This document shows positions 23,393 through 59,115 of a DNA stretch of 64,000 nucleotides, piece by piece. Position 1 is the stretch's first letter. Each line of letters starts with the position of its first letter. The translations under genes were made by a program, and so were the position numbers. Where the stretch lies: the IMG/VR virus record IMGVR_UViG_3300023174_005338, positions 186,001-250,000 of that record; one strand, given 5' to 3'. The notes beneath the pieces were generated by a model. That model had not been told where the DNA came from, searched no databases, and was given only the letters and a program-made list of their open reading frames with translations.

Positions 23393-23965
23393 TCAAAAAA
23401 GGTTTTTGATCTTATCTGGAAGTTGTACAAAACTGATCTGTAGATTGATTCTTGGACTGACAAGATTTTCGGTGCTGTGCAACACCTGCCCGTTCAACAG
23501 ATACCAGGTATTTGCCGGAACTCGGATCGAATCTATCAAAGTTAGATCCGAGTATCGACCTCGGGCCAGTCCATCCTCTCTCACAACAGGGTGATTTTTT
23601 TCCTGCCAAAAACAAACTTCTGCATCTGGGCCCCCGTTGGTGATAGGAAATATCAACACATAATTCCTAACCTTGTCGGTATGTGCACCGGTGCTGGAAA
23701 TATCAGGAGCACCATCGCAGTACATGACAGTTGTGAATAACATGTCATTGCATATGTGTTGGCGCATCCAGGATTCACAGTCACGGGGTGGCACACGACA
23801 CATGTTGCGTCGGGCTGGTCCGTTGCATCCACGCCAGTCTTCCAAAATTCTTATTCCTGTGTATCCCATGTTGTGTTCTTGTGGAATGTTGCTTGTATCG
23901 ATTTGATCCAACAAGGTTTTTGGAGGTACAGGAAGACCAGGTAAAAGTTTGTAATTCCATGTCAT
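23393..23965 (-). CDS. Putative 2OG-Fe(II)/cupin-fold oxygenase
   Basis: AHTD (HxD) and distal VLHS followed by RINLQISF. Confidence 0.5.
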   Translation of the reverse strand: MTWNYKLLPGLPVPPKTLLDQIDTSNIPQEHNMGYTGIRILEDWRGCNGPARRNMCRVPPRDCESWMRQHICNDMLFTTVMYCDGAPDISSTGAHTDKVRNYVLIFPITNGGPDAEVCFWQEKNHPVVREDGLARGRYSDLTLIDSIRVPANTWYLLNGQVLHSTENLVSPRINLQISFVQLPDKIKNLF

Positions 23966-24023
23966 GCAATTACTTATGGCGGGTCACCGGTCACTAAATA
24001 TCACACATTTTACAAAATCTTTG

Positions 24024-34144: not shown

Positions 34145-34612
34145 ATGATATTCAATCATATTCGTAAACTCAAAGAAGACGGCAAGAAGATTGGCATCAC
34201 ATTTTCAACATTTGATATGTTGCATGCCGGTCACATTGCCATGTTGGCCGAGGCCAAGAATCATTGCGATTATCTAATTGCCGGCTTACAAACAGATCCC
34301 ACAATTGATCGTCCAAACACCAAAAACAAACCTGTACAAAGTATTGTAGAGCGTCAAATACAATTGGCAGCCTGTCGATATGTTGACGAGGTAGTAGTGT
34401 ATCAAACAGAACAGGATCTAGTGGACCTATTGCTAATACTTCCATTGGATGTTCGTGTGCTTGGTGTTGAATATCAAGACAAAGAATACACTGGTAAAAA
34501 GGAAGGCGCAGTTCGAGGCATTGTTCCAATTTTTAACGGTCGAGATCATTCATTCTCTAGTTCAGGTCTACGGCAACGTGTGGTGTCGGCCGAAGCCCAC
34601 AAGAAGAAGTAA
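34145..34612 (+). CDS. Cytidylyltransferase-like nucleotidyltransferase (TagD/RfaE-type)
   Basis: FSTFDMLHAGH (HxGH), CRYVDEVV, FSSSGLR. Confidence 0.85.
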   Translation: MIFNHIRKLKEDGKKIGITFSTFDMLHAGHIAMLAEAKNHCDYLIAGLQTDPTIDRPNTKNKPVQSIVERQIQLAACRYVDEVVVYQTEQDLVDLLLILPLDVRVLGVEYQDKEYTGKKEGAVRGIVPIFNGRDHSFSSSGLRQRVVSAEAHKKK

Positions 34613-34867
34613 GTGCAACGAATAAACTTCCATTCCTTTGGCATGGGCGATGTGGAGGATCCAGAATTGTATGCGGCATTGCCCTTGGGCGAGTTCATGG
34701 AAACTGAAAAAGGTCAATGGATCCGAGCGAACTGTGCGGATCCACAATACATTATCCGTCCTGACCCAAACACATATGGTACCCGTGTGATTGTGTATGG
34801 TGAGGTAGAGGACAGATCAGCAACGGAGTATTATTTACGATGGAACAAAATAGAACAATCCTGGTAA
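34613..34867 (+). CDS. Small hypothetical protein
   Basis: GTG start right after previous stop; ends EDRSATEYYLRW. Confidence 0.6.
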   Translation: MQRINFHSFGMGDVEDPELYAALPLGEFMETEKGQWIRANCADPQYIIRPDPNTYGTRVIVYGEVEDRSATEYYLRWNKIEQSW

Positions 34868-35817
34868 CAGGTGGCCTGGGTCTTATTGGGCACAATGTAG
34901 TAGCACAATTAGAACAACAAGGTCATCACGTGATCATTACCGATACCAAAACCAACTATGGAATTATTCCGCCGGCGGAGTTAGATTATCTCCTAACCGA
35001 ACGCCGTAAAAAAATAATCACAGATAGAATTTACAGCATAGACATTGCCGATCATGAAGGAATCAATTGGTTGATACGCACTCATCGCCCAGATACCGTA
35101 GTACATTTGGCCAGCTTTCCTCGACAAAAAGTTGTCAACGCAGACCCTCAATGGGGTAGTCGTACCATGAGCGAAGGACTGCTAAATTTATTAGAAGCTT
35201 CCAAAGCACACAATGTCTGCAAATTTGTTTACATCAGCAGTAGCATGGTCTACGGGGATTTTGCAGATGACGTCACAGAAGATGCCCAATGCCGACCACA
35301 GGGGCAGTATGGTATTATGAAACTGGCCGGCGAATGGCTTGTGCGAGATTACACACGTCGTACCAACATGTCACACATCATAATAAGGCCCAGTGCGGTG
35401 TATGGTCCATTGGATGTAGAGGATCGTGTGATTTCAAAATTCTTATTGACCGCCATGCGTGGTGGCGTTGTCAAGGTCAACGGCGCAACAGAAACCCTGG
35501 ATTTTACCTATGTAGATGATGCTGCCAAAGGTATAGTTGCCGCTACATTACTTGATGTTGTCAACAAAACATACAACATCACAAAAAGTCATTCACGTAG
35601 CTTGCTTGAAGCTGCCAAGTTGGCCGTCAAAATTGTTGGCAAAGGTATCATACAGATTCAAGACAAGGACGAAGATTTTCCTAGTCGTGGTGCATTAAAT
35701 ATACAAGCGGCGCAACAAGATCTTGGGTTTGATCCCCAAGTGGATGTAGAAGAAGGGTTTCAAAACTACTATGAATGGCTTAAACATTCCGTTTACTGGT
35801 CTCAAAAAACAGTATAA
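34840..35817 (+). CDS. NAD-dependent epimerase/dehydratase
   Basis: TGGLGLIG, YISSSMVYG, catalytic YGIMK, RPSAVYGP, DFTYVDD. Confidence 0.9.
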   Translation: MEQNRTILVTGGLGLIGHNVVAQLEQQGHHVIITDTKTNYGIIPPAELDYLLTERRKKIITDRIYSIDIADHEGINWLIRTHRPDTVVHLASFPRQKVVNADPQWGSRTMSEGLLNLLEASKAHNVCKFVYISSSMVYGDFADDVTEDAQCRPQGQYGIMKLAGEWLVRDYTRRTNMSHIIIRPSAVYGPLDVEDRVISKFLLTAMRGGVVKVNGATETLDFTYVDDAAKGIVAATLLDVVNKTYNITKSHSRSLLEAAKLAVKIVGKGIIQIQDKDEDFPSRGALNIQAAQQDLGFDPQVDVEEGFQNYYEWLKHSVYWSQKTV

Positions 35818-36847
35818 CAATCTAAGAACTGAAATCCTAGATGTAACCGATGCTGTGCTTAGGTCAGGCGATCTCATGAACGGCAACTATACCTTAGAGT
35901 TTGAAAACTGGTTGGCCAAAAAAAATCATGTAAAGTATGCTGTGACAGTGCATTCTGGCACACATGCCCTGGAAGCTATCGCTGAATACTATGCCACACA
36001 GACCTATATGCCTAGACCACCGCGTGTGTTAGTGCCGGCCATGACTTATGTGGCCACAGCCAATGCTTTCCTAAGAGCAGGATGGACCATGACCATAATA
36101 GACACCGACTATCATGGACTCATGGATCATAAAAAGATCGACAATACAGAAAGTTATCAAGCCATAGTAGCCGTTGGCCTGTACGGAGCCGCAGTACCCC
36201 GACACGAATACTTGAACAATCGCAGCGTGGTCATAGAAGACGGTGCCCAACACTGGCTGGCCAGCGACAGTCATCGAATAGGCAACAGTTGTGCCATCAG
36301 TTTTGATCCCATGAAGAATTTAAACAGTTATGGCAATGGTGGTGCTGTGGTCACCGATGACATAGACTTGCTGGAGTTTGTGCGTGAATGGCGCAATAAT
36401 TCTAAACCACATCATCAAACAACCGGTACCAACAGCCGCATGAGTGAGATAGATTGTGCGCAGATGATGGTCAAAACAAGGCACATAGATGCCTGGCAAC
36501 TGCGTCGTGGAGAAATAGTCAAGTATTGGATGGATCGCTTGCGAGGTACCGCAGCTCGCACTCTCATAGACAACAACAACTACGGCACGCATGCCTATCA
36601 CAAGTTTGTGATTGAGGTGTCCAACCGCGACACAGTGCAAAGGAATCTTGATCTGCGAAAGATAGAAACTCGCATACACTACCGCGAGCCTTTGCATGAA
36701 TTGCCGGCCTATGCAGAGTTTCCAGGACCTGACATGCTGAGTGCGGCCAGCAGTCTTGCACGCAGGGCACTAAGCCTGCCTCTTTATCCAGAACTTACAG
36801 ATCTGGAAGTGGACTACATTATTGATTCGTTAACAGATTGCGTTTGA
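35771..36847 (+). CDS. DegT/DnrJ/EryC1/StrS-family PLP sugar aminotransferase
   Basis: HSGTHAL, PAMTYVATAN, IEDGAQ, SFDPMKNL (PLP Lys), GNGGAV, LSLPLYP. Confidence 0.9.
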   Translation: MNGLNIPFTGLKKQYNNLRTEILDVTDAVLRSGDLMNGNYTLEFENWLAKKNHVKYAVTVHSGTHALEAIAEYYATQTYMPRPPRVLVPAMTYVATANAFLRAGWTMTIIDTDYHGLMDHKKIDNTESYQAIVAVGLYGAAVPRHEYLNNRSVVIEDGAQHWLASDSHRIGNSCAISFDPMKNLNSYGNGGAVVTDDIDLLEFVREWRNNSKPHHQTTGTNSRMSEIDCAQMMVKTRHIDAWQLRRGEIVKYWMDRLRGTAARTLIDNNNYGTHAYHKFVIEVSNRDTVQRNLDLRKIETRIHYREPLHELPAYAEFPGPDMLSAASSLARRALSLPLYPELTDLEVDYIIDSLTDCV

Positions 36848-38621
36848 TCAGGGCATAAGTGGCCAACCAGTCCCAGTCGTAGCTTTTGCGTAGTTGTTCC
36901 AAGTCTCCGTTGACTTCTTTGTAGTATTCTACTGCGTCCTCGGCGCCCCATTGGCTCCATTCTGAGTTTATTACAGTCTCGGGCACGGGTCCAAGCCAGC
37001 GATCCAATCTATATTTGCTTTCCACATCAGTTTGGCCACACAGCTTCACACACTCGCGAAATGCTGTGCGCCAGGCCATCCAGCGAGTTGAAGCATATTC
37101 AGCTGTGCCAGAAAGTATAGGAACAACTTCATGAGCACTATCCAAGGTAAAATCCAATCCTCGACCTAAATTGTTTAACACCAGTTTTTTATTGTATGCT
37201 ATCATGGCTTGGTGTCCATAGGTCAATCCATTTACAGGATTATGTGCATGGAAGATATAGTGTTTGGGTTCTTGTAATCTATCTGGTTGCCATGACCAAT
37301 CAAACTCTGGGTTGACTTGTAGCTTGGCAAACACAGCAAAGAACCAAGGTGTAGTACTGAGTTCTGCTGCAGCATGATATGCAGCCACACGTCCTGTGAC
37401 TCCTCGACTGACAGTCACACGATTATCTCGGCTGGCCGTTGCCAAAGACAATGCACGCAAGTTTTCCAAGGCATTGGGTTCACCATTTTCTATAAACACT
37501 ATATCAATTGGCTGTTCATCGTGCAGGTGTCTCTGTGTGCGATCTATATAGGAATAATCATAGAGTTGTGTTTTGATATAAGGCACCGCTGTCTTGGGAA
37601 CAATAACTTGGCTTGCTCCTGCACTAAGCGGCACAACGGTCTTGGTTTTTTCTCGCCACAATGGCACTGTAGGAACCTGTGAGACTGGTTCAGTGGCAAA
37701 CACTGCCAAGGGCCCGGCCCAAGAAATAGTTTTGACAGCTTCAACATGTGTATCATGATTGTGTAGTATCACTGGCAAAGGCCGGCGTGGAACTGATGTG
37801 CCAACAAAATTCAGGTCATACCAATCCAACAGTTCAAACTGACCTATGCGTTGGCGGAAGCTGGGCACATGCATGTAGAACGTGTCGCCGAACTTTTCAC
37901 CATCGCTGGCGAACACATGGAGCATGGTGCTTTGCCAAAATTCTGGATGCCAGCTAAAATCAAATCCACGGTAATCACACACACTACTAACAATCCAAAC
38001 ATATTCATGTTCAACTGTGTTAGCTATACGAGTTAATACATCTTTATAATTATCAAAATACCTAACAGTCTTGATAGCATTGGCAACTTGTCCAGCATTG
38101 CCATCCATGTGATCTATTTCTATGATGGGCGTGACTCCTTGTTTGGCACTGCCTCGTATCTGATCCACAAACTTGAGATCCGGACCTCCGTTGAAGTATT
38201 GTGGACCACCGGTGCGTTGATGTTGTGTACCAAATTGATAAGTGTAGGGCGGATCTGTGGGATCAGGATGCCATGACCAATCAAAACTTTCCACGTCAAA
38301 TCCTGCAGGTATGGTCCAGCTGGGTAAATCGTAATAGCGAGTTAGTTGTTTTTCAGTTCTATAGTGTGTTTCTGTGTAGTCACGTTTAGGCACTAGATAT
38401 GTACCTGAGTCTTTTTGCCATTGACTGGCCCAGGCATGACGTTGATGTGCTTGCCAGGGCACTGGTTCCCAAAGAAAATCAAAGCCAGTGTAGTCAGTTA
38501 AATAGTTGACCCACCAAAAATATCTAGTCCTACAGAGTTGTTGTGCATGTTCAAGGTTGTCAGCCTGCTGTTCATGTGCAAACAAGTTGGGTCGAATTCC
38601 AGAATAAAATACGTCAAACAT
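36819..38621 (-). CDS. Two-module glycosyltransferase-like hypothetical protein
   Basis: Repeated FD(W/F)xWxP motifs; C-terminal module (IDIVFIENGEPNA...AWRTAFRECVKL) resembles 52631-53560. Confidence 0.5.
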   Translation of the reverse strand: MFDVFYSGIRPNLFAHEQQADNLEHAQQLCRTRYFWWVNYLTDYTGFDFLWEPVPWQAHQRHAWASQWQKDSGTYLVPKRDYTETHYRTEKQLTRYYDLPSWTIPAGFDVESFDWSWHPDPTDPPYTYQFGTQHQRTGGPQYFNGGPDLKFVDQIRGSAKQGVTPIIEIDHMDGNAGQVANAIKTVRYFDNYKDVLTRIANTVEHEYVWIVSSVCDYRGFDFSWHPEFWQSTMLHVFASDGEKFGDTFYMHVPSFRQRIGQFELLDWYDLNFVGTSVPRRPLPVILHNHDTHVEAVKTISWAGPLAVFATEPVSQVPTVPLWREKTKTVVPLSAGASQVIVPKTAVPYIKTQLYDYSYIDRTQRHLHDEQPIDIVFIENGEPNALENLRALSLATASRDNRVTVSRGVTGRVAAYHAAAELSTTPWFFAVFAKLQVNPEFDWSWQPDRLQEPKHYIFHAHNPVNGLTYGHQAMIAYNKKLVLNNLGRGLDFTLDSAHEVVPILSGTAEYASTRWMAWRTAFRECVKLCGQTDVESKYRLDRWLGPVPETVINSEWSQWGAEDAVEYYKEVNGDLEQLRKSYDWDWLATYALIKRNLLTNQ

Positions 38622-39723
38622 GATTAGAATAGATGAGATTTACAACCATACATTTTGGCCTTGGCTTGAAAAAAATAGGCCAGGAACCAGAATGTTTTTT
38701 TGTGATCCACCGGGCCATACCGATCCTGAACATTTATTTAATCTAGGCCATGATGATGTCATAGAAACTGACTATGTGTTTTTTCACGATCAAGAACCGG
38801 TGGACGTTGATTTATATAGCCAGTTGTTTGATGACGTATTACGTAGAAACTCAGACGTATGGTGGCCAAACAAACCCATACCATTTGGGCACGTAATAGT
38901 GAGCGAGCGCGGTGATAGTGTAAAAAAACTATGTGACACATATGAATGGACCAGTCATTATTATTTTTACCATGGGTGGGCATGCTTAGATTGGTTCCGT
39001 GGTTATGATCGAACATTTTTAATTCCTCGCGCTCAATATAGAAATCCCATTCAAACGTTTATGAGTCCAAATCGCATTGTGGCCGGTAAAAGAGATCATC
39101 GTGTGTTGTTTCTTTACCATGTGTTCAAGCAAGGGCTGGCACATAATCATATCAGCGCACCCAGAATATGTCAATATGAAAATGTAGATATAACAAGTAT
39201 AGCACAAAAGTACGACAATGTATACCAGGACATTGCCACAGTTTTTGATCAAGCACAATTGCCCAGACTATTTGCCGGAGAAGAAACACAACAAATGACC
39301 AGTTGCTGGTTGGGAAACTTCGCCGAAGCACAGGACAGCCTGGTGTACGTGCCTACGGAAACAGTGTATTTTGGTCGTAGAACACACCTCACTGAAAAAA
39401 CATTCAAGGCCATTGCCCTGGAGATGCCGTTTGTGTTGGTGGCACCTGCTGGCAGTCTTGAATACATGCGTGAATACGGATTCCAAACCTTTGCTGGTAT
39501 CTTGGACGAAAGCTATGACGAAGAAACCGATGACCTTCGACGGGTAGAACGGGTAGTAAAACTTTTGAAAGATCTGGACGATCTCAGTGTACGTGAGCGA
39601 CAACAGATACATCAAGCCTGCTTGCCCCGAGTAGAACACAACTACAATCATTTTTATCGCAGTGGATTTAGCGACATACTGTGGAGTGAATTGATCAACA
39701 TGTTAAATGGCCTACCAGTTTAA
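38620..39723 (+). CDS. Hypothetical protein, GT-B/fucosyltransferase-like C-terminus
   Basis: ETVYF...LTEKTFKAI...GFQTF...DESYD; paralogues at 39707 and 50163. Confidence 0.55.
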   Translation: MIRIDEIYNHTFWPWLEKNRPGTRMFFCDPPGHTDPEHLFNLGHDDVIETDYVFFHDQEPVDVDLYSQLFDDVLRRNSDVWWPNKPIPFGHVIVSERGDSVKKLCDTYEWTSHYYFYHGWACLDWFRGYDRTFLIPRAQYRNPIQTFMSPNRIVAGKRDHRVLFLYHVFKQGLAHNHISAPRICQYENVDITSIAQKYDNVYQDIATVFDQAQLPRLFAGEETQQMTSCWLGNFAEAQDSLVYVPTETVYFGRRTHLTEKTFKAIALEMPFVLVAPAGSLEYMREYGFQTFAGILDESYDEETDDLRRVERVVKLLKDLDDLSVRERQQIHQACLPRVEHNYNHFYRSGFSDILWSELINMLNGLPV

Positions 39724-40897
39724 TTTTGCTGCTGATACCGTGTCGAGAAGCAAGGCTTATCCGGCCTTGGCCAAATGGTCCGCGCAACCTTATACCGCAG
39801 AGTGGCGTCAATTCCGTTATCACTGGCCTTACACTGTGCCCTGCGAACTGCACGAACATTGTGCCACCCATGATTTTTCTCATCACATTCACACTGTAGA
39901 GAATTGCTCTGGTGCAAAAAATTTCTATACCGTTGGCTTGGGATTCTTTGATTTCAATATTGATTATTTTTCTTTGATTCCCGATCAAGTGTTTGAACGT
40001 GGTATCACTGTGGTCTTTTACTATCACGAAGGAGACAATCCCTATCGCATAAAACATCGCCTGGATCGACTGTGTGCCAGCCATGGGCTAGATCTCAAAT
40101 GCTATCGTTTTGTATCAGGTAACACCGCTGCCGATCAAATAGAAAACTTTGCCTGGTTTCCAGATCATGAGTTATTATACTGGCATCGCAATCAATCAGT
40201 GCCTGCTACACCCATTCACTTTGACCCCAGACCTTATTGGTTTACCATATTGAATCGCACTCACAAATGGTGGCGTGCCACAGTCATGGCTGATTTACAG
40301 CGTGCCGGCATGTTAGATGTGAGCCAATGGAGTTACAACACTGACATAACTGTAGGTGACGATGCCGCAGACAATCCCATAGAAGTAGATGTGTTGGGCC
40401 TACGTGACGATGTGTCACAATTCCTTAAACGTGGACCTTATGCCTGCGACAACTTCACTGCTGATCAACACAATGATCATCATTTGCACGTGAATCGGTA
40501 TTACACAGACAGCTACTGCCATGTTGCAATAGAAACACACTTTGATACCGATCAGTCGGGCGGTGCTTTTCTCACAGAAAAAACATTCAAACCCATCAAA
40601 CATGGCCAACCTTTTGTGATAGTTGGTGCGGCTGGCAGTTTACAGGCCCTGCGAGATCTGGGTTATCGTACATTTGATCATGTGATTGATCCCAGTTATG
40701 ATTTGGAAACTGACAACACTCGACGTTGGCAAAAAATCTTGACCACAATACAGTACATACAAGCACAAGATCCAGATCAGTGGTTTCAACAATGTGCCAA
40801 CGACATCCAACACAATCAACGACATTTTTTAAGTTCAAAATACGACAGATTAAATACCTTATATGATAAACTCCTACACCAGCTGGCAACCACTTGA
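39707..40897 (+). CDS. Hypothetical protein, GT-B/fucosyltransferase-like C-terminus
   Basis: ETHFD...FLTEKTFKPI...GYRTF...DPSYD. Confidence 0.55.
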   Translation: MAYQFNFAADTVSRSKAYPALAKWSAQPYTAEWRQFRYHWPYTVPCELHEHCATHDFSHHIHTVENCSGAKNFYTVGLGFFDFNIDYFSLIPDQVFERGITVVFYYHEGDNPYRIKHRLDRLCASHGLDLKCYRFVSGNTAADQIENFAWFPDHELLYWHRNQSVPATPIHFDPRPYWFTILNRTHKWWRATVMADLQRAGMLDVSQWSYNTDITVGDDAADNPIEVDVLGLRDDVSQFLKRGPYACDNFTADQHNDHHLHVNRYYTDSYCHVAIETHFDTDQSGGAFLTEKTFKPIKHGQPFVIVGAAGSLQALRDLGYRTFDHVIDPSYDLETDNTRRWQKILTTIQYIQAQDPDQWFQQCANDIQHNQRHFLSSKYDRLNTLYDKLLHQLATT

Positions 40898-41882
40898 AGA
40901 AGTCATAGTGGGTCGTGCCTACAGCCCTGACTACTTTGACTTTATTGACAATGCCCAAGTTCGCTGTCAATTACAGCAGATCCTGGCTGAAACCCAAGAG
41001 GACCTTGACAATCTCCAAAGGACCATAGAACAATACGGAGCCCGTGTGCGTAGACCAAATCTACCACCAAAAGATCAGTTTATATGGTTTCAGACTGAAG
41101 GTGGAGGTGCTCCGTTGCCTCCGCTGACACCAAGAGATTGGCAAATTAGTCTGGGGCAAAAACTCTTGCGTGTGCTCAACATGCCTGAGCTGGATGACAT
41201 CTGTAATGACTATTCTGATCAGGTTGTAAACCCACACAAAAAACGTTGGGATCCTGAGTGCTTACTCAATGGTGCCAGTGCAAGTTGTATTGTGCGTGTA
41301 GGACGTGATGTGTTTTTTGACAACAGCGATTTTCTACGACCAGAACAAACAGCCTGGATAGTAGAAAATTGTCTAGGACCTGAATACAGAATACACGAAG
41401 CTGTCACCGACGGTCATGGTGATGCTGTGTTTGCTATTTTGAAACCTGGTGTGATATTAAGCAGTAAACATGACATGCACCTAAACTTGGCACAAGATTT
41501 TCCAGGTTGGGAAGTATTAAAGATCTGGGATAGCAGCATCTGGGCCGCCATGGAAGTGGGCAAGTTCAAATACGAAGAGTCGCCAGGAGCATGGTATGTG
41601 CAGGGACAGACGCCCACACCCGAGTTCACGCAATTTGTTGATACCTACCTAAACAAGTGGACTGGCTTTGTGGCCGAAACTGTGTTTGATGTCAACTGCC
41701 TGGTGCTGGATGAAGAAAATGTGATATTCAGTGCCTACAACAAACAGGTTTTTGATTTCTGCAAGCAACACAGGATCAATCCCATAATCGCAGAATTGCG
41801 TCATAGTTATTTTTGGGATGGTGGTATAAGTTGTTGCACCCAAGATCTACGTCGTCGCGGTGGTCTTGAGACTTATTTGTAA
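40863..41882 (+). CDS. Amidinotransferase-family (pentein) protein
   Basis: NSYTSWQPLEEVIVG, PRD, GHGD, C-terminal GGISCCT. Confidence 0.8.
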   Translation: MINSYTSWQPLEEVIVGRAYSPDYFDFIDNAQVRCQLQQILAETQEDLDNLQRTIEQYGARVRRPNLPPKDQFIWFQTEGGGAPLPPLTPRDWQISLGQKLLRVLNMPELDDICNDYSDQVVNPHKKRWDPECLLNGASASCIVRVGRDVFFDNSDFLRPEQTAWIVENCLGPEYRIHEAVTDGHGDAVFAILKPGVILSSKHDMHLNLAQDFPGWEVLKIWDSSIWAAMEVGKFKYEESPGAWYVQGQTPTPEFTQFVDTYLNKWTGFVAETVFDVNCLVLDEENVIFSAYNKQVFDFCKQHRINPIIAELRHSYFWDGGISCCTQDLRRRGGLETYL

Positions 41883-42415
41883 AAATAAAAATAACTGCTG
41901 AGTCTGTAGGCGTCTGCTGGCACAGGATTAAACATACCATGCCATTGTAAGGGCTGGCTACCGTCAGGATCAAGATGATTCAACATGATGTAGCCTGAAT
42001 TGGGCACACTGTCAAATTGATGTTTCAAACTATTTGTGTTTTTAAAATGATAAAACCCAGTTCCGTACTGGTCACTGGGCATTATCCAATATAGTTGCAT
42101 GGCATTAGGTAAATGCCCGTCGGTGTGCATGCTACAAGTAAATCCAGGTTCGTCCAACCACCAGTGCCCGTGGCAGGATTGAAATTCAGTGCCCAGGCTC
42201 TGATTGATTGTTGGCAAACACTTTTCTATGTATCGATTGACTTGTCTGACTCGTGAGTCATCATTTGTAATTTTTCTACGGGGCCAATTTTCTTGAAGAT
42301 TTTCTTTTTGCCAAGGCAGTTCAGTCCATTGTATTACTAAAATTTCATTCAATTGCTCTTGGGGCAACAGATCACTCACATGCCATAAACGATGATCAAT
42401 TTGTTCAATCATCAA
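41873..42415 (-). CDS. Putative 2OG-Fe(II) oxygenase-like protein
   Basis: MHTD (HxD), distal WHG, RLSSY. Confidence 0.5.
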   Translation of the reverse strand: MMIEQIDHRLWHVSDLLPQEQLNEILVIQWTELPWQKENLQENWPRRKITNDDSRVRQVNRYIEKCLPTINQSLGTEFQSCHGHWWLDEPGFTCSMHTDGHLPNAMQLYWIMPSDQYGTGFYHFKNTNSLKHQFDSVPNSGYIMLNHLDPDGSQPLQWHGMFNPVPADAYRLSSYFYFYK

Positions 42416-43878
42416 CTGAAAACCTTAACTCCATACTTTTGTTCAAATCTATCAGCGTCAGCACGATCGTTGATCATAGGCTCGCCTCTAATGTTGAGAC
42501 TGGTATTCAGCAACATGGGACATCCAGTGGCTTCATACCAGGCCTCTAAGAGCGATCTAATGCCTGAGCCGTCAGACGCAACAGTCTGTACTCGGCTAGT
42601 GTTATCCACATGACAGATAGCAGGGTATAGGTCAGGACGGCGGCAATTTGCGACTGACTGCATATAAGGACTGCTATGCCAACCGCGGGGCATATGAAAA
42701 AGTTCATGCACATGCTCTGCCAGGACAACCGGCGCAAACGGTCTAAACTTTTGCCTACGTTTGATCTCATTGACTTGATCCTTTATATCTGATCCTCGGG
42801 GATCGGCGAGGAGACTTCGATTTCCAAGGGCTCGGGGTCCAAATTCTGCTCGACCACTAGCGACACCGACGATTCTATCACTTTGTAAATGATCAACGAG
42901 GGCATCAACAGGATACGTTCCTGAGATTGCATGGCCAAGGAACGCATTCCGCCAGTGGAGGCGTCTTCCATGGGCCAGTGCGGCAGCACCAAGGCTGTTG
43001 CCAGCATCGCCAGGACAAGGCATGATCCAAATGTTTTCAAAATATTCACCGAGTTTTCTATTAGCAAGACAGTTCAAAGCCACGCCGCCCTGATAGACTA
43101 GATTAGAACTCCAGCCAAATTCTTGGGCACGACGCATAACACTATATATCAATTCTTCTGTTAAAACCTGGGCACTTGCGGCAATATCTTCGTTGGATGC
43201 AGACCGCAACCAGTCAGGCTCAATGCCTATGTGTAGATTGTCTTCCAGCAAGGCCCGGCATTCTTCAACGTAACATGGCTGTCCGTAGGCACTCATGCCC
43301 ATGGTGATGTATTCTTCATCTAGGGGGTGTAGGCCAATGCGCTGAGTAATCGCACTATAAAACAGCCCGATGCTCCTGGGATAAGTTTGGCTCCAAAGTT
43401 TCTTATAACATGCTCGATTTGTTGCGTTATATTCTGCTCCCCATATCGAGATGGTATCAAACTCGCCTATGGCATCTACGATCACACAAGTGGCACGATC
43501 GTAGGGGCTGGTTTGAAAACCTGCAGCCGCATGGCACAGGTGATGACTGTAAGTTTTTATCTGTCCGGGCGGATGTTGCAACCATGAGCCCAATTGATTC
43601 TTTAATATCTGCTTGACAGTCACATTGGACCAATCTATACCTTGTCCTGACACAAAATTACGTGCTTGTTTTAACCAAGGACGTTCATAATATGCAATGG
43701 TGTCTATGTCGTATTCACAGAATTCTGTCAATAATTCTGGACAAAGATTGGCATCGTTTTTCTTTTTTGAATATCGTTCGCTGTGACCGGCAAATACAAT
43801 TTCACCGTCGCTGCGTATGAGCGTGGCAGCTGCGTCATGAAATCCAGCACTGAGTCCCAGTGTGTACTGATGCTTCAT
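42412..43878 (-). CDS. Carbamoyltransferase (CmcH/NodU/TobZ family)
   Basis: GFHDAAA, HHLCHA, GGVALN, GPRALGNRSLLADPR, RPFAP, LNTSLN. Confidence 0.93.
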   Translation of the reverse strand: MKHQYTLGLSAGFHDAAATLIRSDGEIVFAGHSERYSKKKNDANLCPELLTEFCEYDIDTIAYYERPWLKQARNFVSGQGIDWSNVTVKQILKNQLGSWLQHPPGQIKTYSHHLCHAAAGFQTSPYDRATCVIVDAIGEFDTISIWGAEYNATNRACYKKLWSQTYPRSIGLFYSAITQRIGLHPLDEEYITMGMSAYGQPCYVEECRALLEDNLHIGIEPDWLRSASNEDIAASAQVLTEELIYSVMRRAQEFGWSSNLVYQGGVALNCLANRKLGEYFENIWIMPCPGDAGNSLGAAALAHGRRLHWRNAFLGHAISGTYPVDALVDHLQSDRIVGVASGRAEFGPRALGNRSLLADPRGSDIKDQVNEIKRRQKFRPFAPVVLAEHVHELFHMPRGWHSSPYMQSVANCRRPDLYPAICHVDNTSRVQTVASDGSGIRSLLEAWYEATGCPMLLNTSLNIRGEPMINDRADADRFEQKYGVKVFS

Positions 43879-43976
43879 TTGTAAATAAACGGGTCTCGTT
43901 TGCGAAGTTCTTTTAATTTTTTACGATAACGAATTTCTAATTTGATACGATCGATTAAGATTTTTATCCAAGACAT
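43875..43976 (-). CDS. 33 aa basic peptide MSWIKILIDRIKLEIRYRKKLKELRKRDPFIYK
   Basis: Manual translation; fills the gap and is ATGA-coupled to the carbamoyltransferase. Confidence 0.6.
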   Translation of the reverse strand: MSWIKILIDRIKLEIRYRKKLKELRKRDPFIYK

Positions 43977-45019
43977 TTGATTTGTTTCTCCATGTAATCG
44001 GTGTCACTCCAGTCATATTCATACTCATCACCGGCTGTGCTGGTGCGTATGGCATGAACATTAAGATGTGTATTTAATTGATGCCAAATTTCACGATAAT
44101 CTTCTGTTCCAAAACTGCGAACAAGATCCACTTGCCCTACCTGTGGATGTCCAATGGTCAAACTCTTGTTGTTTGGGTCAATGCCATTGGCCGTTAGCCA
44201 TTCGCGGAATTCCTTTAACTGTCGGATCTGCCAGGGAAATTCACCCGGATTGTTGGCCCACTCTATGTCAAAGTCGCCCGCGGCCTCAGTCTGATTTTTG
44301 AGGCTGGTGGTTGTGAGTTCTCCTAGTCTTGAGTCACGTCCTTCGTCCTGGAACACTTCCCAGTGATGTTTGCCAACGGCTTTGTTCACACCCACATATA
44401 CTCCGCCCAGACTGCGATTGATTGTGTCAATCCCAAACAGTTCATAGTCTTCTGCATCCAACACGAATCTTGGAGCTGATAGCCAGCACATGAGTTGGCT
44501 GGGTCTTTGCCATTCAGGTGCTGTGTGTTTTTTGCGCCACGATAGCTGCCAGCTTTCAAACTCGTGACACAGGAGATTTAATTGTCTGATGTGCCAGCGT
44601 GTGGCGTTGTCGGCACGCCAGTAGTAATCGCTGATGTGTCCGCTGCTGCCTTGTAGATCTTCAAAGTATCTGTGCAGTTGATTGAAATGATCGTGATTGA
44701 CTCCGCCTCGATCATCCACACTGTTGATCATATCAAAGTGATCCGTTATATGATATCCTATGCTGGAATTGTTTATGGCCTGTATGCTGAGATTTATTTG
44801 TTCCAATAGATAAGGGCCATTTCTAGGACCGTCTGCAAATCCAAAAAAACAATAGTTCTTTTCCAAGTGATAATTATTTTGTAGAAGATTGTTCAAAGCG
44901 GCCAGCCATTTGCGACTGAGACTGTTGTCATACACGTTGACATACACACGCAACACATTGTCTGGCGTGCCTAGATCTAGCTCTACAACATCAAGCGGTA
45001 ATTGATTGGTACCAGTCAT
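43964..45019 (-). CDS. Hypothetical protein
   Basis: 351 aa ORF coupled within the radical SAM operon. Confidence 0.7.
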   Translation of the reverse strand: MTGTNQLPLDVVELDLGTPDNVLRVYVNVYDNSLSRKWLAALNNLLQNNYHLEKNYCFFGFADGPRNGPYLLEQINLSIQAINNSSIGYHITDHFDMINSVDDRGGVNHDHFNQLHRYFEDLQGSSGHISDYYWRADNATRWHIRQLNLLCHEFESWQLSWRKKHTAPEWQRPSQLMCWLSAPRFVLDAEDYELFGIDTINRSLGGVYVGVNKAVGKHHWEVFQDEGRDSRLGELTTTSLKNQTEAAGDFDIEWANNPGEFPWQIRQLKEFREWLTANGIDPNNKSLTIGHPQVGQVDLVRSFGTEDYREIWHQLNTHLNVHAIRTSTAGDEYEYDWSDTDYMEKQIKCLG

Positions 45020-46298
45020 AGATATCCTGATTTGATCTTAGTATGTCGGCCATGGTATAGGAATCGCCACGTATTTGTTCTAATTTTAGCACACGACGTT
45101 TGCCTTTTGCAAGTTCTGCTTGCCATTGTTCAGGCCATTGTTCAGCGAATGTGGGTCGTTGTTTGAGTTGTAGCAACACATCTTGTAAGGCACCAGCAGG
45201 CAGTTTTGCTACCAGATTGTCTACGGTGCTGTCTAACAACGGTCTAGGCAAGGCCAAAGGACTCATAATGATATCGGGAGTAAAACTAAATATTACCTTG
45301 GCCAAGACATCCACTCCTAGCTCATCGGCTAGCTGTTGTATGTTTTCCACTTCAAACAGGCCAGGCAAGGTCAAAGTAAAGTCAATGCGCATTTGTCTGC
45401 GATGTCGAACATGTTCAAGGCCTTGTTTAAAGTTTACCAACCACCCATCGTAGGCCAGTCCTGTGCGGATGTATTCTCCTGTTTTTCCTGTTCCGTCGAG
45501 GCTGGCACAAATTTGCCAATCACGTAGATATACCAAGACATCACGGTAAAGATTACAACCACGCCAATACACGCGACTGAGATTAGTATTGTATCTTGCA
45601 TAAACATTTTTTGCATCTCCTAGTTCAATAATTCTGCGCATGTAGCGCCAGTGTTGTTCGTACATCAGTGGTTCGCCGCCCACCCAATAAACTTCTTCCA
45701 CACGATGTTGTTCCACAGCCAAGGCAAATTCAGCTTCAATCTGGCTGTCTTGATAGGCTGTGATTTGTTCGCGCACAGCGGGTTGCATCCAGGTGTTTTT
45801 GGGATTGCTCCAATCAATCATGTTGTGTTGACGTTGTTCGCTTTCCCACGCACTGGATAACATGTCTCCGCAAGTACGACATTTGAAATTACAAAGATTA
45901 CTGAATCTGTAATCCCAACTCACAGGTCGAACCCGGGTGAATCCATAGCGATCTGTAGACCTCATACATTCTTCATATTTGTGTTCAAACAATCGATTGA
46001 AATAATCTCTATATACATCAGTGTTCAATAACTTGTTGTTGCACACTTCGCATTCAGGCAATGTCTCGCCTTTCATCATTCTTAACCTCACGCTTCGCAT
46101 GTGAGGACTGTTCCAGTGTTCGTCTAGGCCAACCGGTTGATAGGTACCAGTGCCGGTGGCAGTGTCAATATACTGTTCAAAGTTTTGTGCAGGTTCTCTG
46201 CTGGCACAACACATGCGTCTTTCAGTTTGTGGACTAAGGTATGTGTGTGTCCATGGCGCCATGCACAAGGTTTCGGGTCTTTTAGCAGGGGCCGGCAT
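44991..46298 (-). CDS. Radical SAM protein with N-terminal twitch/SPASM-like domain
   Basis: CMAPW...MCC...CEVC; CNFKCRTC; VGGEP; NTNL. Confidence 0.88.
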   Translation of the reverse strand: MPAPAKRPETLCMAPWTHTYLSPQTERRMCCASREPAQNFEQYIDTATGTGTYQPVGLDEHWNSPHMRSVRLRMMKGETLPECEVCNNKLLNTDVYRDYFNRLFEHKYEECMRSTDRYGFTRVRPVSWDYRFSNLCNFKCRTCGDMLSSAWESEQRQHNMIDWSNPKNTWMQPAVREQITAYQDSQIEAEFALAVEQHRVEEVYWVGGEPLMYEQHWRYMRRIIELGDAKNVYARYNTNLSRVYWRGCNLYRDVLVYLRDWQICASLDGTGKTGEYIRTGLAYDGWLVNFKQGLEHVRHRRQMRIDFTLTLPGLFEVENIQQLADELGVDVLAKVIFSFTPDIIMSPLALPRPLLDSTVDNLVAKLPAGALQDVLLQLKQRPTFAEQWPEQWQAELAKGKRRVLKLEQIRGDSYTMADILRSNQDIYDWYQSITA

Positions 46299-52629: not shown

Positions 52630-52630
52630 T

Positions 52631-57001: not shown

Positions 57002-57016
57002 TTTCTTTTTCCTAGT

Positions 57017-59099: not shown

Positions 59100-59115
59100 G
59101 CTGTATTTACCTTGA

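What the first reader, a model, noticed from the sequence alone, without database searches (positions are those of the whole stretch)
34145..43878. Aminosugar-tailoring pathway: nucleotidyltransferase, epimerase, DegT aminotransferase, amidinotransferase and carbamoyltransferase
Seen: within 10 kb lie an HxGH nucleotidyltransferase, SDR epimerase/dehydratase, PLP aminotransferase, GT-like proteins, a pentein amidinotransferase, a putative 2OG oxygenase and a TobZ/NodU carbamoyltransferase. A UDP-sugar dehydrogenase and a PIG-L deacetylase lie elsewhere in the window. Established: keto-sugar amination followed by amidination (StrB1 type) and O-carbamoylation (TobZ type) is the logic of aminoglycoside and unusual O-antigen biosynthesis. 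Inference: the phage builds an amino/guanidino/carbamoyl sugar to decorate virions, modify host LPS or modify DNA. Genes lie on both strands, so a single pathway is not proven.
Basis: partly seen in the sequence, partly recalled or inferred. Interest (0 to 1): 0.65.

Follow-up and report, generated by a model that had tools for sequence, protein, structure and literature searches.

The report
Jumbo-phage cationic sugar-tailoring gene module
A 337-kb freshwater jumbo phage and its relatives carry a tightly packed, strongly conserved set of soluble enzymes that most likely builds an unusual amino-, guanidino- and carbamoyl-decorated glycan; the product and what it is attached to remain unknown.

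Summary
Tools confirm a cytidylyltransferase-like gene, an SDR epimerase/dehydratase, a DegT aminotransferase, three glycosyltransferase-fold proteins (one GT-A, two GT-B), an AGAT/StrB1-family amidinotransferase and a NodU/TobZ-type carbamoyltransferase. They also confirm the UDP-sugar dehydrogenase and PIG-L genes elsewhere in the window. The "2OG oxygenase" got no support.

The module is larger than reported. It runs on to about 53,560 and adds an unknown conserved protein (P6), five tandem radical SAM enzymes with an N-terminal twitch domain, a third GT-B and a P1-like protein.

In 53 related phage loci with full flanks, the core genes occur in 47–53 of 53, in the same order and on the same strands. 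The nucleotidyltransferase (5/53) and the "oxygenase" (3/53) are accessories.

Parts of the same enzyme set recur around distant amidinotransferase or P6 homologues:
- a marine single-cell virus
- the cultured cyanophage S-SCSM2R
- Bdellovibrionota MAG contigs
- a marine bacterial contig

All are rich in glycosyltransferases or sugar-nucleotide genes.

All module proteins are predicted soluble. The complete genome lacks initiating phosphoglycosyltransferases and every known entry route to DNA hypermodification.

Best reading: a cytoplasmic nucleotide-sugar tailoring and glycosylation module. The acceptor, possibly virion proteins, is not established. I rate it a new variant of a known kind.

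The parts
34145..34612 (+). Cytidylyltransferase-like nucleotidyltransferase (HAGH motif; RfaE domain II / TagD-like). Accessory gene, found in 5 of 53 relatives.
   Evidence: PF01467 1.2e-11, TIGR02199 1.5e-21, phrog_7878 9e-30; ATG start at 34145; 5/53 loci
34613..34867 (+). 84-aa ORF of unknown function, abutting the SDR gene and weakly conserved.
   Evidence: No family; detected in 29/53 loci at >=35% identity
34840..35817 (+). Extended SDR NDP-sugar epimerase/oxidoreductase. It lacks the Asp-Glu pair of 4,6-dehydratases and is nearest to UDP-GlcA 4-epimerase/UXS-type enzymes.
   Evidence: PF01370 4e-44. PDB: 2hun 6e-30, UDP-GlcA 4-epimerase 6zl6 6.5e-26, MoeE5, UXS. The alignment shows SSSMVYGD against STDEVYGD, with GxxGxxG and YxxxK kept. 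53/53 loci
35771..36847 (+). DegT/DnrJ/EryC1 PLP-dependent sugar aminotransferase.
   Evidence: PF01041 3e-56. PDB best hits: 7b0d 9e-42, DesV, QdtB, WbpE. The PLP lysine aligns. 49/53 loci
36819..38621 (-). P1: 600-aa protein with repeated FDxxWxP motifs in the N-terminal part and a C-terminal GT-A-fold domain (residues ~364-518) without a DxD motif.
   Evidence: No Pfam or PDB sequence hit. AF2 pLDDT is 56 overall and ~80 in the C-terminal domain. VIA Z 11.4 to B4GALNT1, also CHSY3, SpsA and GnT-I. 4568 relatives, all unnamed. 53/53 loci, always on the minus strand
38620..39723 (+). P2: GT-B-type glycosyltransferase-like protein, a paralogue of P3.
   Evidence: 36% identity to P3 over the C-terminal 129 aa, E 2e-20; 53/53 loci; overlaps P3 by 17 bp
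39707..40897 (+). P3: GT-B-fold glycosyltransferase-like protein with a TEK motif as in GT10 fucosyltransferases.
   Evidence: AF2 pLDDT 84, pTM 0.85. Foldseek and VIA: alpha1,3-FucT Z 12.3, EXT1/2 12.3, T4 BGT 12.1, AGT 11.6; all top 50 are GT-B. 47/53 loci
40863..41882 (+). AmT1: amidinotransferase of the AGAT/StrB1 family (pentein fold). It is a divergent phage-only lineage and the most conserved gene of the block.
   Evidence: PDB profile: AGAT 1e-17, HsvA, StrB1, SxtG. D92/H185/D187/C324 align to AGAT D170/H303/D305/C407. Asp254 is replaced by Asn136/Ser139. 80-93% identity in 80 loci. Phage-only clade in the tree
41873..42415 (-). Accessory, found in 3 of 53 relatives.
   Evidence: No hits; 3/53
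42412..43878 (-). NodU/CmcH/TobZ-type O-carbamoyltransferase.
   Evidence: PF16861 4e-49, PF02543 1.5e-32, NodU 2.4e-37, phrog_1601 6e-92; 53/53
43964..45019 (-). P6: conserved 351-aa protein of a family with no known domain. It is linked to DegT and radical SAM genes in bacteria too.
   Evidence: No Pfam, PHROG, NCBIfam, PDB or atlas hit. 389 clusters in the representative library. A homologue sits between DegT and two twitch rSAMs in a marine bacterial contig. 53/53
44991..46298 (-). Radical SAM enzyme 1 with N-terminal twitch domain.
   Evidence: NF033640 280 bits (cut-off 170); CxxxCxxC at 136; 53/53
46282..47499 (-). Radical SAM enzyme 2 with N-terminal twitch domain.
   Evidence: NF033640 345 bits; CxxxCxxC at 123; 52/53
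47496..48863 (-). Radical SAM enzyme 3 with N-terminal twitch domain.
   Evidence: NF033640 408 bits; CxxxCxxC at 157; 48/53
48845..50197 (-). Radical SAM enzyme 4 with N-terminal twitch domain.
   Evidence: NF033640 306 bits; CxxxCxxC at 139; 50% identical to rSAMs of bacterial contig L174
50163..51257 (-). Third GT-B paralogue of the P2/P3 family, sitting among the radical SAM genes.
   Evidence: BLASTP to P3 29% over 204 aa, E 3e-15
51214..52629 (-). Radical SAM enzyme 5 with N-terminal twitch domain.
   Evidence: NF033640 301 bits; CxxxCxxC at 146; 42% identical to the rSAM of Bdellovibrionota contig L150
52631..53560 (-). 309-aa protein related to part of P1. It is probably the first gene of the minus-strand operon.
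   Evidence: 26% over 174 aa to P1; a homologue lies next to DegT in L174; a 573-bp gap lies upstream
4986..6224 (+). UDP-glucose/GDP-mannose dehydrogenase family enzyme, a probable upstream step of the pathway.
   Evidence: PF00984 8e-15, PF03721 6e-14; a 51%-identical homologue lies directly after the amidinotransferase gene in L150
13308..13826 (+). PIG-L family deacetylase, next to a DUF6492 protein (12451-13311).
   Evidence: PF02585 6.4e-11, over the cut-off; DUF6492 7e-11

Best explanation
The region is the core of a cytoplasmic nucleotide-sugar tailoring and glycosylation module of a freshwater jumbo phage. The real extent is about 34,613-53,560, with helper genes at 1,358-6,224 and 12,451-16,370.

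**Proposed steps (all inferred).**
1. A host NDP-hexose, probably after oxidation by the phage UDP-sugar dehydrogenase, is oxidised or epimerised by the SDR and/or by twitch-domain radical SAM enzymes.
2. The DegT enzyme aminates it.
3. The amino group is converted to a guanidino group by the amidinotransferase, with L-arginine as the likely donor.
4. A hydroxyl is O-carbamoylated by the NodU/TobZ-type enzyme via carbamoyl-AMP.
5. The GT-A (P1) and GT-B (P2, P3, 50163-51257) proteins assemble the sugars on a soluble, cytoplasmic acceptor. The most likely acceptor is virion proteins, as in giant-virus and mycobacteriophage virion glycosylation.

**Shown here:** the family or fold of each enzyme, the retained catalytic residues, the tight operon structure, the conservation, and the recurrence of the set.

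**Inferred:** the order of steps, the sugar, the amidination of a sugar amine, and the acceptor.
For: **1. Families and residues.**
- DegT with its PLP lysine.
- SDR with GxxGxxG and YxxxK.
- Amidinotransferase with the Cys, the His and both guanidinium-binding Asp.
- Carbamoyltransferase with both domains.
- Five rSAMs over the NF033640 cut-off, each with CxxxCxxC.
- GT-B and GT-A folds.

**2. Operon structure.** Genes overlap by 2-47 bp. In particular P2-P3-AmT are overlapped, so translationally coupled.

**3. Synteny in 53 loci with full flanks**: SDR 53, DegT 49, P1 53, P2 53, P3 47, AmT 53, CarbT 53, P6 53, rSAM1 53, rSAM2 52. Strands are identical.

**4. Recurrence in distant lineages.**
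- Marine virus AG-345-D19 has AmT -> <- CarbT (50% id) <- twitch rSAM in the same convergent layout.
- A Pseudobdellovibrionaceae MAG contig has twitch rSAM, P3-like GT-B, AmT, UGDH (51% to window 4986-6224), SDR, DegT and three GT2.
- Cyanophage S-SCSM2R has an AmT1-like gene beside KdsA/KdsB/GT genes. It also has an AmT2-like gene inside a run of five GTs with a DegT-like gene, an rSAM and a 2OG oxygenase.
- A marine bacterial contig has P1-like, DegT, P6-like, two twitch rSAMs and six GT2.

**5. A second amidinotransferase.** AmT2 lies next to another GT-B paralogue in this genome and is present in 5 of 5 complete relatives.

**6. A soluble pathway.** No module protein has a transmembrane segment. 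The complete genome has no Bac_transf or Glycos_transf_4.

**7. Late or virion association.** The S-SCSM2R homologue of AmT1 was detected in the virion proteome (PMC12801897).
Against: - No product, substrate or acceptor is known for any gene here.
- AmT1 has Asn/Ser where AGAT has the triad Asp254, and Asp where AGAT has Arg322. Its chemistry may therefore differ from classical Arg-dependent amidino transfer.
- AmT1 is far more conserved (80-93%) than its neighbours (50-71%). That could mean its job is partly independent of the variable glycan.
- The SDR looks like an epimerase, so the source of the keto-sugar for DegT is unclear.
- No sugar-1-phosphate nucleotidyltransferase of the PF00483 type is encoded.
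- A strong terminator-like hairpin separates the module from the tail-fibre genes upstream, so adjacency to structural genes is weak evidence for a virion target.
- The relatives are one clade, so their synteny is shared ancestry.
- The Bdellovibrionota contigs are short MAG contigs and could themselves be viral.
Confidence: 0.5

Rival explanations
1. Host-surface remodelling. The phage enzymes make modified NDP-sugars, or short glycans, that host machinery installs in LPS, capsule or outer-membrane glycoproteins during infection. The purpose would be to block superinfection or change adsorption.
For: - Homologous modules sit in bacterial glycan-type clusters with GT2 arrays.
- The cyanophage AmT1 homologue lies next to KdsA/KdsB.
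- The window also carries UGDH, PIG-L and a porin.
Against: - The complete genome has no initiating phosphoglycosyltransferase.
- No polytopic Wzx/Wzy-like protein appears in the hydropathy scan.
- All seven-plus glycosyltransferase-fold proteins are soluble.
- There is no sign of lysogeny in the window.
Confidence: 0.18
2. DNA hypermodification. The GT-B proteins glycosylate phage DNA, and the tailoring enzymes decorate the DNA-linked sugar to defeat restriction systems.
For: - The P3 model matches T4 beta- and alpha-glucosyltransferases (Z 12.1 and 11.6, tied with fucosyltransferases).
- Phage GTs are known to hypermodify DNA with diverse glycans (Pyle et al. 2024, cited in PMC12619734).
Against: - The complete genome has no ThyA-like hydroxymethylase, TET/JBP, C5-methyltransferase or DpdA/TGT. 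For TET/JBP the control rang nowhere, so that one negative is weak.
- The same module occurs in bacterial chromosomal contigs with GT2 arrays.
- The structural matches are generic for the GT-B fold.
Confidence: 0.1
3. A soluble secondary metabolite. The module makes an aminoglycoside- or aminocyclitol-like compound, as in streptomycin/bluensomycin logic (aminotransferase, StrB1-type amidinotransferase, carbamoyltransferase, BtrN-like twitch rSAM dehydrogenase, GTs). The compound would act on the host or on competitors. The S-SCSM2R authors suggested this reading when they called the homologues 'antibiotic synthesis genes'.
For: - The enzyme set parallels aminoglycoside pathways.
- The best PDB hit of the DegT enzyme is named Gln:scyllo-inositol transaminase.
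- AmT hits StrB1.
- Pseudo-glycosyltransferases VldE/ValL are among the Foldseek hits.
- The S-SCSM2R annotation (PMC12801897).
Against: - No cyclitol synthase is encoded: no DHQ_synthase/DOIS family and no inositol-1-phosphate synthase.
- No exporter or resistance gene was seen in the module.
- The PDB name is generic for the DegT family.
- So many paralogous GTs (six GT-B in the genome) fit a glycan better than a pseudo-oligosaccharide.
Confidence: 0.1
4. The amidinotransferase is functionally separate from the sugar genes. It makes a small guanidino compound from host metabolites, for example guanidinoacetate, homoarginine or amidinated polyamines that could help condense 337 kb of DNA. Its position among the GT genes would then be historical.
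For: - AmT1 is far more conserved than all its neighbours.
- It has active-site differences from AGAT.
- The solved relative HsvA also scores well. From my own knowledge, HsvA acts on polyamines.
Against: - AmT1 overlaps its upstream GT-B gene by 35 bp.
- AmT homologues lie within GT/DegT/rSAM/CarbT sets in at least four separate lineages.
- The paralogue AmT2 is again next to a GT-B paralogue.
Confidence: 0.1

Closest known systems
L-arginine:glycine amidinotransferase (AGAT), StrB1 (scyllo-inosamine-4-phosphate amidinotransferase), HsvA, SxtG
   Same: - Collinear full-length similarity, profile E 1e-17 to 2e-12.
- The N-terminal WxPLEEVIVG motif and the C-terminal GGxxC.T.D.RRRG motif are shared.
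- Equivalents of Cys407, His303, Asp170 and Asp305 are kept.
   Different: - Only 22-29% identical to any cellular or solved member.
- The triad Asp254 is Asn/Ser and Arg322 is Asp.
- There is a ~35-aa insertion.
- It forms a phage-only clade on a long branch.
- No Pfam or NCBIfam model detects it.
- The acceptor is unknown.
Streptomycin/bluensomycin-type aminoglycoside tailoring (DegT-type aminotransferase + StrB1 + O-carbamoyltransferase; BtrN twitch rSAM in butirosin; TobZ in tobramycin)
   Same: The same combination of enzyme families: transamination, amidino transfer, carbamoyl-AMP-dependent O-carbamoylation, twitch-domain radical SAM and GT-B transferases.
   Different: - No cyclitol synthase is present.
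- The twitch domain is N-terminal rather than C-terminal.
- There are five rSAM paralogues and at least seven GT-fold proteins.
- The module is encoded by a lytic-type jumbo phage.
- Homologous bacterial modules carry GT2 arrays typical of glycans.
Virus-encoded autonomous glycosylation (chlorovirus and mimivirus sugar-nucleotide pathways plus soluble GTs; mycobacteriophage virion glycosylation, Freeman et al. 2023, cited)
   Same: Soluble virus-encoded GTs plus SDR and aminotransferase genes for amino sugars, with no lipid-carrier machinery.
   Different: To my knowledge an amidinotransferase, a carbamoyltransferase and multiple radical SAM enzymes are not part of those systems. No virion glycan has been demonstrated here.
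Cyanophage S-SCSM2R ORF266 and ORF305-309 (PMC12801897)
   Same: - It has an AmT1-clade gene (29% id) and an AmT2-like gene (33% id).
- The AmT2-like gene is preceded by the same small 2OG-oxygenase-like gene as AmT2 here.
- It sits in a GT-rich operon with a DegT-like gene and an rSAM.
   Different: - It is a T4-like cyanomyovirus of 244 kb.
- No carbamoyltransferase or twitch-rSAM array lies next to these genes.
- The authors interpreted the genes as antibiotic synthesis genes, without experiments on them.
ArnA/ArnB and UDP-GlcA-utilising SDR pathways (UGDH -> SDR 4-oxidation -> DegT-family transamination)
   Same: - A UGDH-family gene is in the window, and one lies adjacent to AmT in L150.
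- The SDR is nearest to UDP-GlcA 4-epimerase/UXS-type enzymes.
- A DegT enzyme follows.
   Different: - The SDR lacks the Glu of UXS/ArnA-type decarboxylases in the aligned motif (SSSM against STSE/STDE).
- No formyltransferase or ArnT-like membrane transferase is present.
- The DegT enzyme is closer to 3-aminotransferases (DesV, QdtB, WbpE) than to ArnB.

Membership tests
AGAT/StrB1 amidinotransferase family (pentein superfamily) | Significant, collinear sequence similarity to solved members and not to deiminases | tested here: met
   Profile against PDB: AGAT 1.1e-17, HsvA 7e-14, StrB1 1.4e-13, SxtG 2.4e-12. Matches cover the N-terminal, middle and C-terminal parts. No ADI, AgDI, PAD or DDAH hit at E<=0.01.
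AGAT/StrB1 amidinotransferase family (pentein superfamily) | Catalytic Cys nucleophile (AGAT Cys407) and His (His303) | tested here: met
   C324 and H185 align to them and are invariant in 10 orthologues and in the AmT2 family.
AGAT/StrB1 amidinotransferase family (pentein superfamily) | Two guanidinium-binding Asp (AGAT Asp170, Asp305) | tested here: met
   D92 (in the PRD motif) and D187 (in HGD) align and are invariant.
AGAT/StrB1 amidinotransferase family (pentein superfamily) | Third triad residue Asp254 | tested here: not met
   The position is Asn136 (MAFFT with AmT2) or Ser139 (HMMER register), never Asp, in AmT1 and its orthologues. The paralogue AmT2 keeps LDAAN. The register is uncertain and no 3D model was made.
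AGAT/StrB1 amidinotransferase family (pentein superfamily) | Arg-dependent amidino transfer to an amine acceptor | not testable with these tools
   Needs an enzyme assay.
NodU/CmcH/TobZ O-carbamoyltransferases | Both the Kae1-like N domain and the YrdC-like C domain over the Pfam cut-offs | tested here: met
   PF02543 113.8 bits (cut-off 24); PF16861 167 bits (cut-off 27); phrog_1601 6e-92 over the full length. The NodU equivalog cut-off is not reached (129 against 1000), so it belongs to the family but is not NodU itself.
DegT/DnrJ/EryC1/StrS sugar aminotransferases | Family HMM over the cut-off and PLP-binding lysine | tested here: met
   PF01041 191.6 bits (cut-off 19.8). The Lys in SFDPMKN aligns to the Lys of 7b0d SFYPTKN. 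No NCBIfam equivalog cut-off is reached.
NDP-hexose 4,6-dehydratases (RmlB type) | Asp-Glu acid/base pair in the S-T-D-E-V-Y-G motif | tested here: not met
   The query has SSSMVYGD opposite STDEVYGD of 2hun. TIGR01181 scores 132 bits against a cut-off of 365. It is an extended SDR (PF01370 151 bits) but should not be filed as a 4,6-dehydratase.
NF033640 N-terminal twitch-domain radical SAM proteins | Family HMM over the cut-off, CxxxCxxC, and an N-terminal Cys cluster | tested here: met
   The five genes score 280-408 bits against a cut-off of 170. Each has one CxxxCxxC and 4-6 Cys in the first 120 residues.
GT-B glycosyltransferases | Two-Rossmann-domain GT-B fold | tested here: met
   The P3 model has pLDDT 84. 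All 50 best VIA matches and 34 Foldseek matches at E<=1e-3 are GT-B enzymes, with top Z 12.3 over 262-298 residues.
GT-B glycosyltransferases | Membership of a defined sequence family (Pfam/CAZy) and a known donor | tested here: not met
   No Pfam, NCBIfam, PHROG or PDB sequence hit for P2 or P3. The donor and acceptor are unknown.
2OG-Fe(II) oxygenases (for 41873-42415) | Family HMM or similarity to known members | tested here: inconclusive
   No hit in Pfam, NCBIfam, PHROGs or PDB, and no BLAST similarity to five annotated S-SCSM2R proteins of that region. No structure was predicted.
Aminocyclitol aminoglycoside pathways | A cyclitol-forming enzyme (2-deoxy-scyllo-inosose synthase / DHQ synthase family, or inositol-1-phosphate synthase) | tested here: not met
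   PF01761 and PF01658 are absent from the complete genome, and the controls rang.
Und-P-dependent O-antigen/capsule pathways | Initiating phosphoglycosyltransferase and membrane flippase/polymerase | tested here: not met
   PF02397 and PF00953 are absent. No module protein has a predicted TM segment, and no protein with 10 or more TM segments is present in the genome (crude hydropathy scan).

The most novel reading that the evidence does not exclude
These abundant freshwater jumbo phages, and some marine phages and bacteria, make a previously undescribed class of glycan. It would carry a guanidino sugar formed by a phage-specific amidinotransferase lineage acting on an NDP-amino sugar or glycan amine, further O-carbamoylated and remodelled by a new family of sugar-acting N-terminal-twitch radical SAM enzymes. 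It would be attached to virion proteins without any lipid carrier.
Probability: 0.25. Interest if true: 0.85.

Novelty: new variant of a known kind. Interest (0 to 1): 0.6.

Why it matters
- Virus-encoded glycosylation is well studied in giant viruses and a few phages. An amidinotransferase, a carbamoyltransferase and five radical SAM enzymes wired into soluble glycosyltransferase operons would be a new chemical repertoire for viral glycans.
- A strongly cationic guanidino sugar is a chemistry otherwise known from aminoglycoside antibiotics.
- The families involved are very abundant in lake metagenomes. P1, P3 and P6 each have 3,300-5,000 unnamed relatives, so assigning them a function would annotate thousands of "hypothetical" proteins.
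- The module links several orphan families into one testable pathway that also exists in bacteria: the N-terminal-twitch rSAMs, the P6 family, the P1 family and the TEK-motif GT-B family.

Tried and rejected
**Searches that found nothing**
- Megablast of the 10-kb region against 50,697 phage records: no match.
- Pfam, NCBIfam and PHROGs on P1, P2, P3, P5 and P6: nothing.
- PDB sequence and profile searches for P1, P3, P5 and P6: only noise.
- ESM Atlas for P1: only a weak GT2 lead at 0.85. For P6: no usable hit.
- Full HMMER search of 1.84 billion representatives with P6: 389 related clusters. A Pfam scan of 38 diverse members found no family.
- Literature searches found no paper on this clade's module. 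'Moraphages' (PMC12619734) are a different lineage of up to 307 kb and do not mention these genes.

**Weak or partial results**
- The whole-protein AF2 model of P1 was poor (pLDDT 56). Only the C-terminal domain is interpretable, and the N-terminal repeats stay unassigned.
- The careful phylogeny did not finish in time, so only the quick tree is reported. It has long-branch warnings and no named reference enzymes.
- Promoter and terminator scans were barely above shuffles and are used only for the one strong hairpin at 55973-55954.

**Ideas rejected**
- The SDR as a 4,6-dehydratase: its motif is missing.
- Co-transcription of the module with the tail-fibre genes: a terminator and gaps lie between them.
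- The DNA-modification routes, a lipid-carrier pathway and a cyclitol pathway.

**Not used**
- Read laying and complex prediction. Only one marine RNA run held 5% of the words, and no binding claim is made.

Full report
**Context**

The window is bases 186,001-250,000 of a single 337,119-bp IMG/VR virus record with direct terminal repeats. CheckV rates it 100% complete. GC content is about 46%. DNA identical or near-identical to the region occurs in freshwater and lake metagenomes from several studies. No cultured phage shares nucleotide similarity.

**Checking the observation**

- 34145-34612 is a cytidylyltransferase-like protein with an HAGH motif (PF01467; RfaE domain II 1.5e-21).
- 34840-35817 is an extended SDR (PF01370 4e-44).
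- 35771-36847 is a DegT aminotransferase (PF01041 3e-56). Its PLP lysine aligns to solved relatives.
- 42412-43878 is a NodU/CmcH/TobZ-type carbamoyltransferase with both domains.
- 40863-41882 (here AmT1) gets no Pfam or NCBIfam hit, but a profile of ten orthologues matches solved amidinotransferases: AGAT 1e-17, HsvA 7e-14, StrB1 1.4e-13, SxtG 2.4e-12. No deiminase is matched.

Counting along the printed alignments with full-length AGAT numbering gives these equivalents in AmT1:

| AGAT residue | AmT1 residue |
|---|---|
| Asp170 | Asp92 |
| His303 | His185 |
| Asp305 | Asp187 |
| Cys407 | Cys324 |
| Asp254 (third triad residue) | Asn136 or Ser139, depending on the register |
| Arg322 | Asp204 |

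The first four are invariant in the orthologues. The last two are substitutions.

The "GT-like proteins" are real.

- P3 (39707-40897) folds with pLDDT 84. Every one of its 50 best structural matches is a GT-B glycosyltransferase: alpha1,3-fucosyltransferase and EXT1/2 at Z 12.3, T4 beta-glucosyltransferase at 12.1.
- P2 (38620-39723) is its paralogue.
- P1 (36819-38621, minus strand) has a GT-A-fold C-terminal domain, with Z 11.4 to B4GALNT1 and also SpsA and GnT-I. The model of the rest of P1 is poor.

The UDP-sugar dehydrogenase (4986-6224) and the PIG-L deacetylase (13308-13826) are also confirmed. The "putative 2OG oxygenase" (41873-42415) found no support in any search.

The minus-strand operon that ends at the carbamoyltransferase runs upstream to about 53,560. 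It contains:

- P6 (43964-45019), which has no known domain.
- Five paralogous radical SAM enzymes. All score above the curated cut-off of NF033640, the N-terminal twitch-domain radical SAM family (280-408 bits against 170). All have a CxxxCxxC motif.
- A third GT-B paralogue (50163-51257).
- A protein related to P1 (52631-53560).

Almost every gene overlaps its neighbour. P2, P3 and AmT1 overlap by 17 and 35 bp, so they are translationally coupled.

The genome as a whole has six P2/P3-type GT-B paralogues and seven twitch rSAMs. It also has a second, more canonical amidinotransferase (AmT2, genome 63241-64170) that again lies next to a GT-B paralogue. AmT2 is present in all five complete relatives tested.

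**Co-occurrence**

AmT1 has 166 relatives in IMG/VR, on contigs up to 364 kb. Gene presence in the 53 loci with 10 kb on both sides:

| Gene | Loci with it (of 53) |
|---|---|
| SDR | 53 |
| DegT | 49 |
| P1 | 53 |
| P2 | 53 |
| P3 | 47 |
| AmT1 | 53 |
| Carbamoyltransferase | 53 |
| P6 | 53 |
| rSAM1 | 53 |
| rSAM2 | 52 |
| Nucleotidyltransferase | 5 |
| P5 | 3 |

Order and strand are the same throughout. The nucleotidyltransferase and P5 are therefore accessories.

These loci are one clade, so this is conserved synteny, not independent association. Independent evidence comes from distant homologues.

1. **Marine single-cell virus AG-345-D19.** An AmT1-like gene (about 30% id) converges on a carbamoyltransferase (50% id) followed by a twitch rSAM, the same layout as here. 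A second AmT copy lies 5 kb from another carbamoyltransferase.
2. **A Pseudobdellovibrionaceae MAG contig.** It carries a twitch rSAM (42% to rSAM5), a P3-like GT-B, an AmT2-like gene, a UGDH (51% to window 4986-6224), an SDR, a DegT and three GT2 genes in a row. Two other Bdellovibrionota contigs carry the AmT2-like gene with the same small upstream gene and a P3-like GT-B.
3. **The cultured cyanophage S-SCSM2R.**
   - The AmT1-like ORF266 lies beside KdsA, KdsB, glycosyltransferases and 2OG oxygenases.
   - An AmT2-like ORF309, preceded by the same small gene (annotated there as a 2OG oxygenase), lies in a run of five glycosyltransferases with a DegT-like gene and a radical SAM gene.
   - The authors called these "antibiotic synthesis genes" and detected ORF266 in the virion proteome (PMC12801897).
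4. **A 199-kb marine bacterial contig.** It has P1-like, DegT, P6-like, two twitch rSAMs (50% to rSAM4) and six GT2 genes.

The set is therefore a recurring glycan-type module shared by phages and bacteria.

**Placing the amidinotransferase**

Cellular homologues are 22-27% identical to AmT1 but 35-39% identical to AmT2.

In a quick maximum-likelihood tree, AmT1 and its orthologues group with the marine phage homologues in a phage-only clade (SH-aLRT 95). A long branch separates this clade from 83 cellular and AmT2 sequences. AmT2 falls inside the cellular radiation next to the Bdellovibrionota sequences.

Caveats on the tree:
- The careful search did not finish.
- There are long-branch warnings.
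- No named reference enzymes are included.

AmT1 is the most conserved gene in the block, at 80-93% identity against 50-71% for its neighbours. I cannot explain this.

**Chemistry inferred**

The SDR has SSSMVYGD where 4,6-dehydratases have STDEVYGD. Its best solved relatives after one archaeal protein are UDP-glucuronate 4-epimerases (6zl6, MoeE5) and UDP-xylose synthases. It is probably an epimerase or 4-oxidising enzyme acting on a UDP-uronate, not a 4,6-dehydratase.

That fits the UGDH gene in the window and the UGDH next to the amidinotransferase gene in the Bdellovibrionota contig.

The DegT enzyme is nearest to 3-aminotransferases (DesV, QdtB, WbpE) and to an entry named Gln:scyllo-inositol transaminase.

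Twitch-domain radical SAM enzymes such as BtrN oxidise secondary alcohols to ketones for transamination (my own knowledge). The five paralogues could therefore supply keto groups, or perform epimerisation or C-methylation. This is speculation.

Amidination of the resulting amine and O-carbamoylation follow by analogy with StrB1 and TobZ/NodU.

**Where the product goes**

- No module protein has a predicted transmembrane segment.
- The complete genome lacks Bac_transf and Glycos_transf_4 initiating transferases. It also lacks PF00483 sugar nucleotidyltransferases.
- It lacks ThyA-like hydroxymethylases, DpdA/TGT and C5-methyltransferases, and TET/JBP, although the control for that family rang nowhere.
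- It lacks cyclitol synthases.

This argues against an autonomous lipid-carrier pathway, against the known routes to glycosylated DNA, and against an aminocyclitol product. It leaves a soluble cytoplasmic acceptor.

Virion proteins are the most economical guess. Three things point that way:
- the precedents in giant viruses and mycobacteriophages;
- tail-fibre-like genes immediately upstream;
- the virion-proteome detection of the cyanophage homologue.

A strong terminator-like hairpin (55973-55954) and gaps separate the module from the tail-fibre genes. The acceptor therefore remains open.

**Verdict**

The general category, phage-encoded sugar-tailoring and glycosyltransferase clusters, is known, and a related amidinotransferase has been annotated in one cyanophage. 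The conserved combination with a carbamoyltransferase, an array of N-terminal-twitch radical SAM enzymes and several orphan families has not, to my knowledge or in the searched literature, been described or explained. I rate it a new variant of a known kind, of moderate-to-high interest.

Noticed in passing
window 11282-12403; 21290-22264; 22419-23366; 26320-27210; 23964-24920: The phage carries host-like envelope and transport genes: a Gram-negative porin (Porin_4 2e-36), two TctC/Bug-type receptors, a DctP TRAP solute-binding protein and a nitronate monooxygenase-like gene. They suggest a proteobacterial-type host. However, a closely related phage contig (L094, AmT1 81% identical) is binned in a Haliscomenobacter (Bacteroidota) MAG. 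The host is unresolved.
   Followed up: partly
window 27323-28408 and 31337-32629: A MoxR-type AAA ATPase and a DUF2201 metallopeptidase/VWA protein lie just upstream of the sugar module. The VWA gene is found in only 10 of 80 related loci.
   Followed up: no
window 36819-38621 (minus strand): P1 is wedged on the opposite strand between plus-strand genes. It overlaps the DegT gene end by 29 bp and the P2 start by 2 bp, so no intergenic space is left for promoters. The arrangement is identical in 53 of 53 relatives.
   Followed up: partly
window 1358-6224 and 12451-16370: The same window holds two further sugar-type clusters. The first has a second SDR, a NAD-synthase-family (amidotransferase-like) protein and UGDH. 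The second has DUF6492, PIG-L, two unknowns and a SPASM-type radical SAM.
   Followed up: partly
G000:C1 about 155,000-180,000 (upstream of the window): Glycan-type genes continue for about 30 kb before the window: rSAM g155921, GT-B paralogue g156923, SDRs g170547 and g179478, a short DegT-like g171491, and g176276. Homologues of g171491 and g176276 sit next to AmT2-like genes in Bdellovibrionota contigs and in S-SCSM2R. Roughly 85 kb of the genome looks devoted to this chemistry.
   Followed up: partly
G000:C1 57,267-60,810 and 66,130-67,161 (locus L082): Near AmT2 lie a FecR-domain protein, a CHASE2-sensor adenylate/guanylate cyclase with four predicted TM segments, and a UvdE UV-endonuclease.
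   Followed up: no
window 55954-55973 (minus strand): A strong terminator-like hairpin (AAAGCCCC GCAA GGGGCTTT plus a T run) lies right after the tail-fibre-like gene block 55991-63921.
   Followed up: no
window 59116-63921 and 57017-58297 (minus strand): There is a 1601-aa protein with a weak CBM_5_12 hit. Next to it is a 426-aa tail-fibre-like protein with a C-terminal intramolecular-chaperone (Peptidase_G2-like) region. They are candidate receptor-binding proteins and possible glycosylation targets.
   Followed up: no
window 40863-41882: AmT1 is 80-93% identical across the clade while all neighbouring genes are 50-71% identical. This is unusually strong constraint for an auxiliary enzyme.
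   Followed up: partly
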